From Scyliorhinus canicula (lineage: Eukaryota), in the NCBI RefSeq assembly GCF_902713615.1, contig NC_052162.1:61309913-61373912 (forward strand): DNA of 64,000 bases, read 5' to 3'. How positions within the stretch are numbered: the stretch's first letter is position 1; each line of letters opens with the position of its first letter. A program made the translations under genes and the position numbers. The notes beneath the pieces were generated by a model. The model worked only from the letters and a program-made list of their open reading frames with translations, searched no databases and was not told the DNA's origin. Positions 54,085-59,160 of the stretch are shown one piece after another.

Positions 54085-54302
54085 GTAGGTAGTTTCTCTT
54101 TGTGGAAAAAAGTAGTTGAAAATACACTCTTGGAAAGAAAAGGCCAAGGAGCGATCCTTCTACCAATAGGAGGTTATTCATGGAGGCCCGCCTTCTCAAT
54201 CTTGCCCCTTAGAGCATAGAGCATAGAACACTACAGCGCAGTACGGGCCCTTCGGCCCTCGATGTTGCGCCGACCTGTGAAACCATCTGAAGCCTATCTG
54301 AC

Positions 54303-57300
54303 CTACACTATTCCATTTTCATCCATATGTCTATCCAGTGACCACTTAAATGCCCTTAAAGTTGGCGAGTCTACTACTGTTGCAGGCAGGGCGTTCCACA
54401 CCCTTACTACTCTCTGAGTAAAGAAACTGCCTCTGACATCTGTCCTATATCTATCACCCCTCAATTTAAAGCTATGTCCCCTCGTGTTGGTCATTACCAT
54501 CCGAGGAAAAAGACTCTCACTGTCCACCCTATCTAACCCTCTGACTATCTTATATGTCTCTATTAAGTCACCTCTCAGCCTTCTCCTCTCTAACGAAAAC
54601 AACCTCAATTCCCTGAGCCTTTCCTCGTAAGACCTTCCCTCCATACCAGGCAACATCCTAGTAAATCTCCTCTGAACCCTTTCCAAAGCTTCCACATCCT
54701 TCCTATAATGTGGTGACCAGAACTGCACGCAGTACTCCAGGTGCGGCCGCACCAGAGTTATGTACAGCTGCAGCATGACCTTATGGTTCCGAAACTCAAT
54801 CCCCCTGCTTATAAAGGCTAGCACACCATATGCCTTCTTAGCAGCCCTATTAGCCTGGGTGGCAACTTTCAGGGATTTATGTACCTGGATGCCGAGATCT
54901 CTCTGTTCATCTACACTACCAAGAATCTTGCCATTAGCCCAGTACTCTGCATTCCTGTTACTCCTTCCAAAGTGAACCACCTCACACTTTTCCGCATTAA
55001 ACTCCATCTGCCACCTCTCAGCCCAGCTCTGCAGCTTATCTATGTCCCTCTGTATCCTATAACATCCTTCAGCACTATCCACAACTCCACCGACCTTCGT
55101 GTCATCTGCAAATTTACTAACCCATCCTTCTACACCCTCTTCCAGGTCATTTATAAAAATGACAAACAGCAGTGGCCCCAAAACAGATCCTTGCGGTACA
55201 CCACTAGTAACTGAACTCCAGGATGAACATTTGCCATCAACCATCACCCTCTGTCTTCTTTCAGCTAGCCAATTACTGATCCAAACCGCTAAATCACCTT
55301 CAATTCCATACTTCCTTATTTTCTGCAATAGCCTACCGTGGGGAACCTTATCAAACGCCTTACTGAAATCCATATACACCACATCAACAGCTTTACCCTG
55401 ATCCACCTGTTTGATCACCTTCTCAAAAAACTCAATAAGGTTTGTGAGGCATGACCTACCCTTCACAAAACCGTGTTGAGTATCTCTAATCAACTTGTTC
55501 TTTTCAAGATGATTATAAACCCTATCTCTTATAACCTTTTCCAACATTTTACCCACAACCGAAGTAAGGCTCACAGGTCTATAATTACCAGGGTTGTCTC
55601 TACTCCCCTTCTTGAACAAGGGGACAACATTTGCTATCCTCCAGTCTTCCGGCACTATTCCTGTCGACAAAGACGACATAAAGATCAAGGACGGGGCAGC
55701 ACGGTGGCGCAGTGGGTTAGCCCTGTTGCCTCACGGCGCTGAGGTCCCAGGTTCGATCCCGGCTCTGGGTCACTGTCCGTGTGGAGTTTGCACATTCTCC
55801 CCGTGTTTGCGTGGGTTTCACCCCCACAACCCAAAGATGTGCAGGCTAGGTGGATTGGCTACGCTAAATTGCCCCTCAATTGGAAAAAAATTAATTGGGT
55901 ACTCTAAATTTGAAAAAAAAAAAATAAAGATCAAGGACAAAGGCTCTGCAATCTCCTCCCTGGCTTCCCAGAGAATCCTAGGATAAATCCCATCTGGCCC
56001 AGGGGACTTATCTATTTTGACATTTGCTAAAATTGCTAACACCTCCTCCTTTTGAACCTCAATTCCATCTAGCCTGGTCGACTGAACCTGAGTGTTCTCC
56101 TCGACAACATTGTCTTTCTCCAGTGTAAACACTGACGAAAAATATCCATTTAATGCTTCCCCTATCTCCTCTGATTCCGCACACAACTTTCCACTACTAT
56201 CCTTGATTGGCCCTAATCTTACTCTAGTCATTCTTTTGTTCCTGATATGCCTATAGAAAGCCTTAGGGTTTTCCTTGATCCTATCCGCCAACGACTTTTC
56301 GTGTCCTCTCCTCGCTCTTCTTAACTCTCCCTTTAGGTCCTTCCTGGCTAACTTGTAACTCTCAAGTGCCCTAACTGAGCCTTCATGTCTCATCCTAACA
56401 TAAGCTTTCTTCTTCCTCTTGACAAGTGCTTCAACTTCCTTAGTAAACCACGGTTCCCTTGCTCGACAACTTCCTCCCTGCCTGACAGGTACATACTTAT
56501 CAAGGACACGCAGTAGCTGTTCCTTGAAAAAGCTCCACATTTCGATTGTACCCATCCCCTGCAGTTTCCTTCCCCATCCTATACATCCTAAATCTTGCCG
56601 AATAGCATCATCATTGCCTTTCCCCCAGCTATAATTCTTGCCCTGCGGTATATACCTATCCCTGCCCATTGCTAAAGTAAACATAACCGAGTTGTGATCA
56701 CTATCACCAAAGTGCTCACCTACATCTAAATCTAATACCTGGCCGGGTTCATTACCCAGTACCAAATCCAATGTGGCCTCGCCCCTTGTTGGCCTGCCTA
56801 CATACTGTGTCAGAAAACCCTCCTGCACACACTGCACAAAAACTGACCCATCTATAGTAATCGAACTATAGTATTTCCAGTCAATATTTGGAAAGTTAAA
56901 GTCCCCCATAACAACTACCCTGTTACTCTCGCTCCTGTCAAGAATCATCTTTGCAATCCTTTCCTCTACATCTCTGGAACTATTCGGAGGTCTATAGACA
57001 ACTCCCAACAGGGTGACCTCTCCTCTACTGTTCCTAACCTCGGCCCATACTGCCTCAGTAGACGAGTCCTCAAGCGTCCTTTCTACCGCCGTAATACTTT
57101 CCTTGATTAACAATGCCACACCCCCCCCCTCTCTTTTACCATCTTCTCTGTTCTTACAGAAACATCTAAATCCTGGAACCTGCAACAACAATTCCTGTCC
57201 CTGCTCTACCCATGTTTCCGAAATCGCCACAACATTGAGATCCCAGGTACCAACCCATGCTGCAAGCTCACCCACCTTATTCCGGATGCTCCTGGCATTG

Positions 57301-57443
57301 AAGTAGACACACTTCAAACCAGCGTCCTGCTTGCCGGTGCCCTCTTTCGAACTTGTAACCCTATCCCTGACATCACTACTTTCAACATCCTGTACACTGG
57401 GACTACAATTTAGGTTCCCATCCCCCTGCTGAATTAGTTTAAA
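54303..57443 (-). CDS. CR1 ORF2 (APE endonuclease + reverse transcriptase), interrupted only by the SINE at 55693-55923
   Basis: NARS, ETW, YRPP, GDFN, SDH; GVPQGSVLGP, KFADD. Removing 246 bp (SINE + one TSD) rejoins EPLSLIF-MSSLSTG in frame. Confidence 0.92.
55693..55923 (+). mobile_element. Young short tRNA-derived SINE with poly(A) tail and 15-bp TSD
   Basis: A box tggcgcagtgg, B box ggttcgatccc; TSD ATAAAGATCAAGGAC at 55678-55692 and 55924-55938. Confidence 0.92.
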
Positions 57444-58376
57444 CCCCCCCCGAAGAGCACTAGCAAATCTCCCCCCCAGGATATTGGTACCCCTCTGGTT
57501 CAGATGAAGACCATCCTGTTTGTAGAGGTCCCACCTACCCCAGAATGAGCCCCAATTGTCCAGGAAACCAAAACCCTCCCTCCTGCACCATCCCTGTAGC
57601 CACGTGTTCAACTCCTCTCTCTCCTTATTTCTCTCTTCGCTAGCACGTGGCACGGGTAACAACCCAGAGATAACAACTCTGTTTGTTCTAGCTCTCAGCT
57701 TCCACCCTAGCTCCCTGAATTTCTGTCTCAAATCCCCATCTCTCTTCCTACCTATGTCGTTGGTACCTATGTGGACCACGACTTGGGGCTGCTCCCCCTC
57801 CCCCTTAAGGATCCCAAAAACACGATCAGAGACATCACGAACCCTGGCACCTGGGAGGCAACACACCAACCGTGAGTCTCTTTCTTTCTCACAGAACCTC
57901 CTGTCTGTTCCTCTAACTATGGAGTCCCCAATGACAAGTTCGCTGTTCCTCTTCTCCCTTCCCTTCTGAGCAACACGGACAGACTCTGTGCCAGAGACCT
58001 GTGCCCTATTGCTTACCCCTGGTAAGTCGTCCCCCGCAACAGTATCCAAAACGGTATACTTGTTATAGAGGGGAACGACCACAGGGGATCCCTGCACTGC
58101 CTGCCGGTTCCCTCTCCCTCCCCTGACGGTAACCCATCTACCTTCTTCTTTTACCTGAGGTGTGACTACCTCCCTATAACTCCTCTCAATAACCTCCTCT
58201 GCCTCCCGAATGATCCGAAGTTCATCCAGCTCCAGCTCCAGGTCCCTAACGCGGCTCTCGAGGAGCTGGAGTTGGGTGCACTTCCCGCAGATGTAGTCAG
58301 AAGGGACACTAGAGGTGACCCTTTCCTCCCACATTCTGCAGGAGGAACATTCAACTGCCCTAGCCTCCATTCCCAC
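57434..58376 (-). CDS. CR1 ORF1 (Zn finger / coiled coil / SGNH esterase); reads through into ORF2 in this copy
   Basis: MGMEARAVECSSCRMWE...YICGKC...IGDSIVRG...HIGTND...DGLHLN. Confidence 0.9.
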
Positions 58377-58541
58377 TGAACTAACTTCCCAACTACTGAA
58401 AAATAAAAATAAAAAACTTGTTAGTTTAGCAATCCAACAGACAGAACCTTTTTCTTGGTTAGAGGAGGAGGATGGGTGGGAGACACTACGTAAGTAGTGT
58501 TTCGGGTAAAGCTGTCACTCGAGAACAGCCCCTTCACAAAC

Positions 58542-58761
58542 CACCTTCAACTTACGCTGACCGCACTGCACGTATGCAAATCTCCCCGGAACAGCCAATC
58601 AGAAGCTCTGCTCTGCTGCCCTCTGCTGGATGCTCGCCTTCCGTCGAACTCCTCGGGTCACTGATGCAGGTGCACCTTCAACTTACGCTGACCGCACTGC
58701 ACGTATGCAAATCTCCCCGGAACAGCCAATCAGAAGCTCTGCTCTGCTGCCCTCTGCTGGA
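58542..58761. repeat. Two identical 89-bp blocks (131-bp period) in the CR1 5' UTR
   Basis: 58542-58630 equals 58673-58761; each has ATGCAAAT and AGCCAATCAG. Confidence 0.9.
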
Positions 58762-58906: not shown

Positions 58907-59160
58907 GGACACGATTCTCCCAGCCCCGGGCCGGAGAATCGCCGCAACCGCGCCACGCCGCCCCAACGCCGGCGCACAATTCTCCGAGGTGCGGAGAATC
59001 GGCGCCATTTGTACCGCCACATTTGGCCGGGCTGCCGATTCTCCGGCCTGAATGGGCTGAGCGGAAACGGCAGAGTCCCGCCGGCGCCGTTCACCCCTGG
59101 TCGGTGTCGGCGGGAACTCTGCGCGAAGGATTGGGGTTGGCCTGTGGGGCGGGGAAAAGC
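58907..59160. mobile_element. Harbinger-type terminal fragment (CpG-rich)
   Basis: GG..CGATTCTCC TIR type and internal GGAGAATCG repeats. Confidence 0.5.

What the first reader, a model, noticed from the sequence alone, without database searches (positions are those of the whole stretch)
57395..57460. Candidate -1 programmed ribosomal frameshift signal (U_UUA_AAC + stop) joining ORF1 to an AUG-less ORF2 in a CR1 LINE
Seen: the minus strand reads CTT C GGGGGGGG TTTAAAC TAA TTCAGCAGGGGGATGGGAACC. TTTAAAC (57443-57437) is directly followed by TAA. The ORF2 frame is open through it (FKLIQQG...) and has no ATG for 165 codons; the first Met (56948) lies after the NARS, ETW, GGGVALL and YRPP endonuclease motifs. 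With 7 G instead of 8, ORF1 would end ggT TTA AAC TAA (G-L-N-stop), placing the heptamer in exact X_XXY_YYZ register with ORF2 in the -1 frame. Established: U_UUA_AAC is the coronavirus -1 slippery site. Inference: this CR1 family makes a gag-pol-like ORF1-ORF2 fusion by -1 PRF, unlike L1 reinitiation. A G-rich tract and a TGGGA...TCCCA hairpin follow as possible stimulators, though the hairpin is further away (~16 nt) than the usual spacer. My recollection that other vertebrate CR1 ORF1s also end L-N-stop at TTTAAACTAR is unverified, and I have not checked whether PRF is already reported for CR1.
Basis: partly seen in the sequence, partly recalled or inferred. Interest (0 to 1): 0.85.

Follow-up and report, generated by a model that had tools for sequence, protein, structure and literature searches.

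The report
Conserved frameshift signal in CR1 LINEs
The first gene of this CR1 jumping gene ends on a classic ribosome-slip signal (UUUAAAC plus stop) that is kept letter for letter from sharks to birds, so these LINEs probably make their endonuclease/reverse transcriptase as an ORF1-ORF2 fusion by -1 frameshifting; this copy has one extra G that puts the signal out of phase.

Summary
In this copy the 8 G put ORF1 and ORF2 in one frame, giving an 852-codon ORF. The slip site is therefore out of phase here, and ORF2 is also broken by a SINE.

- The three closest relatives have 7 letters where this copy has 8.
- In 11 fetched junctions (sharks, ray, skate, teleost, frog, turtle, lizard, alligator, bird), ORF1 ends T_TTA_AAC plus stop, with one GTTAAAC variant. 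ORF2 is always in the -1 frame and has no conserved AUG.
- About 150 ORF1 proteins end in LN.
- Of 26 invariant amino-acid columns in ORF1, only the final Leu (TTA) and Asn (AAC) use a single codon in every sequence.
- In-frame esterase-endonuclease fusions are absent from the protein databases.

Against a canonical signal, no downstream hairpin is conserved or more stable than shuffled sequence. Only a linear G box (GGGGG..GGGA), 8-11 nt downstream in most junctions, is kept.

I found no paper linking CR1 to frameshifting, but the older subscription papers could not be read. The scan has already noted this signal at other CR1 copies of this genome. No experiment has tested it.

The parts
54211..58761 (-). 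CR1-clade LINE copy. The 5' limit is approximate. It has a 5' UTR with two 89-nt direct repeats, ORF1, ORF2 and a 3' UTR ending in TCTATGC-type short repeats.
   Evidence: Sequence; Pfam domains.
57444..58370 (-). ORF1 from its ATG: Cys-rich knuckle, coiled coil and a GDSL/SGNH esterase domain. In this copy it runs on in frame into ORF2.
   Evidence: translation. PF13472, E = 2e-14; about 170 homologues of about 305-330 aa.
57444..57451 (-). Run of 8 G. It is one letter longer than the 7-nt spacer in the three closest relatives, and it puts ORF1 in the ORF2 frame.
   Evidence: a 1-nt deletion at 57444 in 18 and 22 DNA contigs and in 3 and 3 contigs of putative RNA runs.
57437..57443 (-). Slippery heptamer TTTAAAC (U_UUA_AAC in relatives' ORF1 frame).
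   Evidence: It is nearly invariant in alignments A1 and A2. Codon test.
57434..57436 (-). TAA, the ORF1 stop in phased copies. It is read as part of CTA-ATT in this copy's fused frame.
   Evidence: A stop follows the heptamer directly in 12 of 12 junctions; TAA, TAG and TGA are all seen.
57416..57426 (-). Conserved linear G box GGGGGATGGGA, starting 10 nt after the heptamer. It is a candidate 3' stimulator.
   Evidence: the G columns are invariant or at least 90% conserved while the encoded residue at the preceding codon varies.
57398..57420 (-). It is local to shark copies and not conserved.
56694..57305 (-). ORF2 apurinic-type endonuclease domain.
   Evidence: PF03372, E = 1e-18, residues 47-250 of the piece that starts at 57443.
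56946..56948 (-). First ATG in the ORF2 frame. It lies inside the endonuclease domain, 165 codons after the heptamer.
55693..55923 (+). tRNA-derived SINE with an A tail, inserted antisense into ORF2. It is flanked by 15-bp target duplications (55938-55924 and 55692-55678) and breaks ORF2 at the 55820 stop.
   Evidence: Sequence; translations.
54915..55607 (-). ORF2 reverse transcriptase domain.
   Evidence: PF00078, E = 1e-36.
54303..54305 (-). ORF2 stop codon (TAG).

Best explanation
This is the ORF1/ORF2 junction of a CR1-clade LINE. In the family, and in vertebrate CR1 elements generally, ORF1 ends ...xxU UUA AAC stop, and ORF2 (endonuclease plus reverse transcriptase) lies in the -1 frame without its own start codon.

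The most likely mechanism is programmed -1 ribosomal frameshifting. With tRNA-Leu on UUA and tRNA-Asn on AAC, a fraction of ribosomes slip back one base to UUU AAA and continue into ORF2. This would make a Gag-Pol-like ORF1p-ORF2p fusion (...L-N-L-...). The remaining ribosomes stop at the adjacent stop codon and make ORF1p alone.

The directly adjacent stop and a conserved linear G-rich box, 8-11 nt downstream in most junctions, are the only candidate stimulators. No conserved hairpin or pseudoknot was found, so the efficiency may be low, which would suit a LINE that needs little ORF2p.

The window's copy carries one extra G before the heptamer. That fuses ORF1 and ORF2 in frame and puts the slip site out of phase. 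It also carries a SINE in ORF2 and is dead.

Shown: the anatomy, the conservation, the phase and the codon-level constraint. Inferred: that ribosomes actually slip, how often, and what stimulates it.
For: (1) Ten of the 11 fetched junctions have TTTAAAC directly followed by a stop in the ORF1 frame: two metagenomic or Logan sharks, Mustelus, Leucoraja, Paramormyrops, Hyla, Chelydra, Zootoca, Alligator and Lagopus. The Hemitrygon copy has GTTAAAC. All three stop codons occur.

(2) ORF2 is in the -1 frame in every case. That frame is open through the heptamer but for only 1-37 codons upstream. The first in-frame ATG is scattered between -1 and +166 codons, and is absent in one copy (same calls).

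(3) 81 of 89 C-terminally complete ORF1 homologues end in LN, as do 73 of 96 further hits, including about 20 bird species and alligator. The residue before LN lacks a U-ending codon in only 3 of 81, against a 14% background (P = 0.002).

(4) Codon test: of 26 ORF1 columns with an invariant degenerate amino acid, 24 use 2-5 codons. Only the terminal Leu (TTA in all 11) and Asn (AAC in all 11) use one. Other invariant Leu columns never use TTA.

(5) No in-frame esterase-endonuclease fusion appears among the 150 best of 15,326 representative hits, nor among proteins of 468-1488 aa. The window's fusion is therefore the exception.

(6) The nearest relatives have 7 nt where the window has 8, and 7-G contigs exist in runs of the same organism.

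(7) U_UUA_AAC is among the most shift-prone heptamers on mammalian ribosomes (PMC5009743).
Against: The 70 nt downstream fold no better than dinucleotide shuffles in 8 species (z from -1.14 to +1.23). RNAalifold finds 0 consensus pairs in 12 sequences. No G-quadruplex motif is shared. The usual structured stimulator 5-9 nt downstream is therefore missing or undetected; pseudoknots and long-range pairs were not excluded.

Human L1 can translate ORF2 without an AUG after ORF1 termination (discussed in PMC1965478), so the lack of an AUG is not proof.

In this copy the site is out of phase. One relative has GTTAAAC. There is no ribosome profiling, reporter or peptide evidence. The sequences are related by descent, so the counts are not independent events.
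Confidence: 0.75

Rival explanations
1. ORF2 is made by termination-reinitiation or non-AUG initiation after ORF1 stops, as in L1 or SART1. On this view the conserved UUUAAAC-stop-G box is a restart or tethering signal rather than a slip site.
For: ORF2 lacks a conserved AUG, as functional L1 ORF2 may (PMC1965478). SART1 couples its ORFs at UAAUG (PMC3708506). The G box contains (U)GGGA-like cores and is a linear element. One teleost copy has an ATG directly before the heptamer in the ORF2 frame. No frameshift-type structure was found.
Against: Reinitiation gives no reason for an exact X_XXY_YYZ heptamer in the ORF1 register, or for conservation of the synonymous sites of the last two ORF1 codons only. 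Restart codons are absent, and the -1 frame can be closed 1 codon upstream of the heptamer (Leucoraja).
Confidence: 0.12
2. The conservation reflects something other than recoding. Examples are a required C-terminal Leu-Asn on ORF1p combined with an overlapping RNA motif, such as a packaging or RT-recognition signal.
For: LN is nearly universal at the protein level. The G box is conserved as a linear sequence.
Against: A protein-level need for LN would allow CTN or TTG and AAT codons. None is seen in 11 sequences, while all other invariant residues vary in codon. The phase relation to an AUG-less ORF2 would be a coincidence.
Confidence: 0.07
3. The family is designed as a single fused ORF1-ORF2 (8 G is the genuine state), and copies with a stop are the decayed ones.
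For: This copy has an uninterrupted 852-codon frame from ORF1 into ORF2. Most of the k-mer depth at 57444 shows no deletion, but that depth is dominated by short contigs that do not bridge the run.
Against: No such fusion appears in two protein databases. The three nearest relatives and all other lineages have the stop in phase. 7-G contigs have summed depths of thousands.
Confidence: 0.03
4. Polymerase slippage on the G run, during transcription or reverse transcription, makes the frame change at the RNA level rather than on the ribosome.
For: A 7-8 G homopolymer lies directly upstream in this shark family, and both lengths occur.
Against: The G run is not conserved outside this subfamily, where the spacer reads GGGAGGG, GAGGAATG or GAGGGC. 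The heptamer is conserved everywhere.
Confidence: 0.03

Closest known systems
Coronavirus ORF1a/1b -1 PRF (IBV, SARS-CoV), site U_UUA_AAC
   Same: It uses the identical heptamer in the identical register, with the downstream polymerase ORF in the -1 frame without its own start (PMC5009743).
   Different: Coronaviruses use a strong pseudoknot about 5-7 nt downstream, and the 0-frame stop is not directly adjacent. Here no conserved structure is found, a stop abuts the heptamer, and the host is a cellular LINE.
Gag-Pol -1 PRF of retroviruses and LTR retrotransposons, and the retrotransposon-derived vertebrate gene PEG10 (from my own knowledge)
   Same: The logic is the same: an abundant structural or RNA-binding upstream protein and a rare fusion carrying the reverse transcriptase.
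   Different: Those elements are LTR-type with a protease that cleaves the fusion. CR1 has no protease, so the fusion would stay esterase-EN-RT.
Luteovirus and dianthovirus -1 PRF (barley yellow dwarf virus)
   Same: From my own knowledge, the shift site there is followed directly by the 0-frame stop. The stimulator is not a simple local pseudoknot but needs long-distance pairing (PMC5009743).
   Different: I found no conserved long-range partner for the G box. A 12-bp match near the ORF2 end occurs in the turtle and lizard copies only.
Protein-dependent PRF with a linear or distant 3' element (arterivirus nsp1beta/PCBP; cardiovirus 2A)
   Same: [quoted passage not shown] The CR1 G box sits 8-11 nt downstream in most junctions.
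   Different: The arterivirus motif is C-rich, whereas this one is G-rich. No binding factor is known, and the role of the G box is only inferred.
L1 and SART1 ORF2 translation (unconventional termination-reinitiation; UAAUG coupling)
   Same: All are bicistronic LINE RNAs with very low ORF2 output. How ORF2 is translated is called 'not clear' or 'not known' for LINEs in general (PMC3708506; PMC1965478).
   Different: L1 ORFs do not overlap and yield separate proteins. CR1 has an in-register slippery heptamer and an overlapping -1 ORF2, which predicts a fusion.

Membership tests
CR1-clade LINE | ORF2 with an apurinic-type endonuclease followed by a reverse transcriptase | tested here: met
   PF03372 (E = 1e-18) and PF00078 (E = 1e-36).
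CR1-clade LINE | Esterase-type (SGNH/GDSL) ORF1 with an N-terminal Cys motif | tested here: met
   PF13472 (E = 2e-14). Homologues are the ORF1s of turtle, bird and crocodilian elements. PMC13343379 states that esterase ORF1 is the type found in CR1 and L2.
CR1-clade LINE | 3' end with a hairpin and short direct repeats instead of a poly-A tail | tested here: met
   GC-rich palindrome followed by TCTATGC repeats at about 54260-54211. Placement by an RT tree within CR1 versus L2 was not done.
Programmed -1 ribosomal frameshift signal | X_XXY_YYZ heptamer in the register of the upstream ORF | tested here: not met
   Not met in this copy: 8 G put ORF1 in the other frame, and the phased frame is open for only 19 codons. 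Met in 10 of 11 relatives.
Programmed -1 ribosomal frameshift signal | Downstream ORF in the -1 frame, open through the site and lacking its own initiation codon | tested here: met
Programmed -1 ribosomal frameshift signal | Purifying selection on the heptamer nucleotides beyond the protein code | tested here: met
   Only the TTA and AAC codons are invariant among 26 invariant-residue columns.
Programmed -1 ribosomal frameshift signal | 3' stimulatory stem-loop or pseudoknot 5-9 nt downstream | tested here: not met
   0 consensus pairs. MFE z-scores range from -1.14 to +1.23. Only a linear G box is conserved. Pseudoknots and long-range pairs were not excluded.
Programmed -1 ribosomal frameshift signal | Demonstrated transframe product at a defined efficiency | not testable with these tools
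   This needs a reporter assay, ribosome profiling or mass spectrometry.

The most novel reading that the evidence does not exclude
All jawed-vertebrate CR1 LINEs express their reverse transcriptase only as an ORF1p-ORF2p fusion, through a -1 frameshift that works without an RNA hairpin. It would be driven by U_UUA_AAC, an abutting stop codon and a conserved linear G box (GGGGG..GGGA), 8-11 nt downstream in most junctions, that acts through a host G-tract-binding protein, the ribosome entry channel or a G-quadruplex. That would be a stimulator class not yet documented in natural use.
Probability: 0.25. Interest if true: 0.85.

Novelty: new member of a known kind. Interest (0 to 1): 0.7.

Why it matters
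How LINEs translate ORF2 from a bicistronic RNA is an old open question, and it has been answered only partly for L1 and SART1. CR1 is the dominant LINE group of most non-mammalian vertebrates.

A letter-perfect coronavirus-type slip site at every ORF1 end, held for more than 400 million years, would make the question directly testable with a short reporter. It predicts a Gag-Pol-like esterase-EN-RT fusion as the active enzyme. That would change how CR1 ribonucleoprotein assembly and cis-preference are modelled.

It would also add a very large set of natural eukaryotic -1 frameshift sites that apparently lack a hairpin. For genome annotation, it explains why CR1 ORF2 has no start codon and why ORF1 proteins all end in LN.

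Tried and rejected
It is predicted, but it is not conserved and is no better than shuffles.
- **G-quadruplex.** A G3-type motif was found in one species only.
- **Long-range partner of the G box.** A 12-bp complement lies 74 nt before the ORF2 stop in Chelydra and Zootoca, but not in the window, Paramormyrops or Lagopus. I take it as chance or lineage-specific.
- **Read laying to count 7 G against 8 G in the family.** All runs are short contigs. The 1-nt-shorter form is present in 18, 22, 3 and 3 contigs, and there are loose ends at 57450. The number of 8-G contigs cannot be read from the table, and depth at the site is dominated by contigs that do not bridge the run. The ratio is therefore undetermined.
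- **Metagenome scan with the ORF1 esterase.** It returned six loci at only 25-33% identity, with no CR1 junction.
- **Apparent ORF1-ORF2 fusions among long database hits.** P0124, P0137, P0160, P0208 and P0257 have no esterase part.
- **tRNA scan of the SINE.** No tRNA was called.
- **TRF on the 5' UTR.** No array was found. The two 89-nt copies are 131 nt apart and were seen by eye.
- **Literature.** Nine full-text searches found no paper linking CR1 to frameshifting. The 2016 recoding review (as far as it is held), the 2014 CR1 survey and the 2026 CR1 survey do not mention it. Kapitonov & Jurka 2003 and Kajikawa 1997 are not held, and I did not look up Haas 1997, so an older remark on overlapping CR1 ORFs cannot be excluded.

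Full report
**Observation**

On the minus strand the window reads CTTC, eight G (57451-57444), TTTAAAC (57443-57437), TAA (57436-57434), seven letters, then GGGGGATGGGA (57426-57416). The frame that encodes the endonuclease reads F-K-L-I-Q-Q-G through the heptamer. Its first Met is 165 codons later at 56948, inside the endonuclease domain.

One point needs stating plainly. With eight G, ORF1 and ORF2 lie in the same frame. ORF1 starts at ATG 58370 and carries a Cys motif, a coiled coil and a GDSL/SGNH esterase (PF13472). Together with ORF2 it forms one 852-codon ORF, 58376..55818. The frame in which T_TTA_AAC would be phased is open for only 19 codons upstream. In this copy the slip site is therefore out of register.

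ORF2 is also cut at 55820 by a 231-bp tRNA-derived SINE (55693-55923). The SINE is inserted antisense and has 15-bp target duplications. The RT part continues after it to the stop at 54303, followed by a 3' UTR that ends in TCTATGC-type repeats.

**Is eight G the family state?**

The three closest relatives I could fetch are a Logan shark contig (86% ORF1 identity), Mustelus asterias and a JGI contig. All have seven letters between CTTC and TTTAAAC (GGGAGGG, GGGAGGG, AGGGGGG), against eight in the window. All end ORF1 as ...G-L-N-stop.

I laid contigs of two DNA runs and two putative RNA runs of the same organism on 57100-57800.
- A one-letter deletion at 57444 appears in 18, 22, 3 and 3 contigs, with summed word depths of 4,529, 8,346, 464 and 597.
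- Further contigs break at 57450 and continue with the window's own upstream sequence, which is again the seven-letter form.
- The table does not allow a count of contigs with eight G, so the ratio is not known.

Two protein searches address the same question from the other side.
- A junction-centred search of 1.84 billion representatives gave hits on the esterase side that end at the junction, or hits on the endonuclease side that begin after it. None of the 150 best was an esterase-endonuclease fusion.
- A search restricted to proteins of 468-1488 aa found a single hit, which is ORF2 only.

The in-frame fusion is thus peculiar to this copy. It may be a one-base gain in a homopolymer, or an assembly error in a homopolymer; I cannot tell which.

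**Comparative test of the signal**

The ORF1 search returned about 170 relatives, mostly 300-330 aa. Of 89 that retain the C-terminal region, 81 end in Leu-Asn, and 77 of those end exactly 26 residues after the start of the DGLHL motif. A second search from the snapping-turtle protein added turtles, squamates, frogs, alligator, ostrich and about twenty other birds. In that set 73 of 96 end in LN, mostly as R-A-L-N.

I fetched the DNA for eleven junctions:
- Sharks: Mustelus asterias and the two shark-like contigs (the Logan contig and the JGI contig).
- Ray and skate: Hemitrygon and Leucoraja.
- Teleost and frog: Paramormyrops and Hyla.
- Reptiles and bird: Chelydra, Zootoca, Alligator and Lagopus.

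Ten have TTTAAAC as xxT TTA AAC in the ORF1 frame, and the Hemitrygon copy has GTTAAAC. In all eleven a stop follows at once, and TAA, TAG and TGA all occur. In all eleven the endonuclease frame is the -1 frame. It is open through the heptamer but for only 1-37 codons upstream. The first ATG in that frame lies anywhere from -1 to +166 codons, often inside the endonuclease, and is absent in one copy. Four of these ORF2 frames run on for 955-978 codons after the heptamer, and a fifth is open for 897 codons to the end of its contig.

**Constraint at the nucleotide level**

I aligned the eleven ORF1 coding sequences by codon. There are 26 columns in which a degenerate amino acid is invariant. In 24 of them, two to five different codons are used, and the three other invariant Leu columns use CTN or TTG and never TTA. 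The only two columns with a single codon in all eleven sequences are the last two of ORF1: TTA and AAC.

The residue before LN varies (G, A, T, S, C, Y, D and others). It is one without a U-ending codon in only 3 of 81 cases, against 14% in the preceding 30 residues (P = 0.002). This is the pattern expected if the RNA sequence U_UUA_AAC is what selection keeps, rather than the peptide.

Under tandem slippage the -1-frame codons UUU and AAA are not translated as Phe-Lys. A dual-coding argument therefore does not explain the pattern, unless ORF2 starts upstream of the heptamer, and in the skate copy there is room for only one codon there.

**Stimulators**

- Across twelve junctions RNAalifold finds no consensus pair in the 90 nt downstream.
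- The 70 nt downstream of eight species fold no better than dinucleotide shuffles, with z from -1.14 to +1.23.
- A G-quadruplex motif of the G3 type occurs in one species only.

What is conserved is a linear G box, GGGGG, 0-2 letters, GGGA. It starts 8-11 nt after the heptamer in eleven of the twelve junctions and about 17 nt after it in the alligator copy. The G that precedes the first Gly codon is kept although the encoded residue there changes (Q, L, G, W, V, K). This suggests an RNA-level rather than protein-level constraint, though on a small sample.

The recoding review notes three relevant points (PMC5009743). Some 3' stimulators begin 12-15 nt from the site and can be linear mRNA with trans-acting factors. 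G-quadruplexes stimulate frameshifting in synthetic constructs, while natural use is not yet known. Barley yellow dwarf virus needs pairing over 4 kb.

I looked for a long-range partner of the G box. The only finding was a 12-bp complement 74 nt before the ORF2 stop in the turtle and lizard copies, with none in the other three elements tested. The stimulator is therefore unresolved, and efficiency could be low.

**Mechanism and rivals**

The best reading is -1 programmed frameshifting that yields an ORF1p-ORF2p fusion (0.75). The main rival is L1-like, AUG-independent reinitiation after the ORF1 stop (0.12). It is compatible with the missing AUG and the missing hairpin, but it does not explain an in-register slippery heptamer with frozen synonymous sites. 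Other functions for the motif (0.07), a genuinely fused single ORF (0.03) and polymerase slippage on the G run (0.03) fit the data less well. Their evidence is set out under the rival explanations.

**Comparison with what is known**

The heptamer and its register are those of the coronavirus 1a/1b site. The logic is that of Gag-Pol. The abutting stop and the lack of a simple local structure recall luteoviruses. A linear element about 10 nt downstream recalls the protein-dependent arterivirus and cardiovirus sites.

For LINEs, open-access sources describe ORF2 translation as unclear or unknown (PMC3708506; PMC1965478). They mention frameshifting only for HeT-A gag and, as a suggestion, +1 frameshifting in Paramecium LINEs (PMC5405496).

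Nine full-text searches found nothing that links CR1 to frameshifting. The 2014 survey (PMC4316615) and the 2026 survey (PMC13343379) of CR1 elements do not contain the words frameshift or overlap. The original chicken and turtle CR1 papers and Kapitonov & Jurka 2003 were not read: two are not held and I did not look up Haas 1997. An early remark on overlapping ORFs may exist in them. I put the chance that this has been explicitly reported at roughly one in four.

**Earlier notes of this scan**

At least nine notes describe the same U_UUA_AAC junction at other CR1 copies of this genome, several of them as 'in phase'. Two follow-ups reached the same conclusion, citing rays, eels, turtles and birds. 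A note on this window states that the copy encodes one ORF1-ORF2 fusion once the SINE is removed. I re-derived the cross-species conservation, the fusion and the SINE independently. Eels and the in-phase copies elsewhere in the genome were not checked here.

**Limits**

Everything about ribosome behaviour is inference.

Noticed in passing
window 55693-55923 (+), target duplications 55938-55924 and 55678-55692: A 231-bp tRNA-derived SINE with an A tail is inserted antisense in the CR1 ORF2 just before the RT domain. It has a perfect 15-bp target-site duplication (GTCCTTGATCTTTAT on the minus strand). ARAGORN calls no tRNA in it.
   Followed up: partly
window 58761-58673 and 58630-58542 (minus strand): The CR1 5' UTR holds two direct copies of an 89-nt unit, 131 nt apart. 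Each contains GATTGGCT (a CCAAT box on the other strand). This resembles promoter monomers of the kind seen in mouse L1. TRF did not report it.
   Followed up: no
window about 58920-59110 (minus strand): Just upstream of the CR1 5' end lies a GC-rich stretch with several copies of GGAGAATCG and its complement CGATTCTCC in both orientations. It may be another repeat family.
   Followed up: no
proteins P0006, P0288, P0334: Public records name CR1 ORF1 proteins as 'SGNH/GDSL hydrolase' of Pseudomonas aeruginosa (74% identical to this shark ORF1) and of Klebsiella pneumoniae (54% identical to the turtle ORF1). These are on contigs of 3-4 kb and are probably vertebrate contamination of bacterial assemblies. 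A Varanus CR1 ORF1 is named 'Replicase polyprotein 1a'.
   Followed up: no
L005:5924-5936 (Paramormyrops): In this teleost copy an ATG sits directly before the heptamer in the ORF2 frame (ATGTTTAAACTAG). Here alone, ORF2 could also start by a stop-start type of coupling.
   Followed up: no
L003 and L006, 74 nt before the ORF2 stop: In the turtle and lizard elements the junction G box is complementary over 11-12 bp to GUCUCCUUC(C/U)UUGG, which encodes the conserved ESPSL motif near the ORF2 end. This would be a possible BYDV-like long-range pair. It is not seen in the shark, teleost or bird elements.
   Followed up: partly
window 57100-57800, runs X9 and X11: Runs guessed to be RNA hold many contigs of this CR1 family. 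One is a near-identical 146-nt contig across the junction with one gap (depth 536). This hints that phased copies are transcribed, but the RNA label is only a guess.
   Followed up: no
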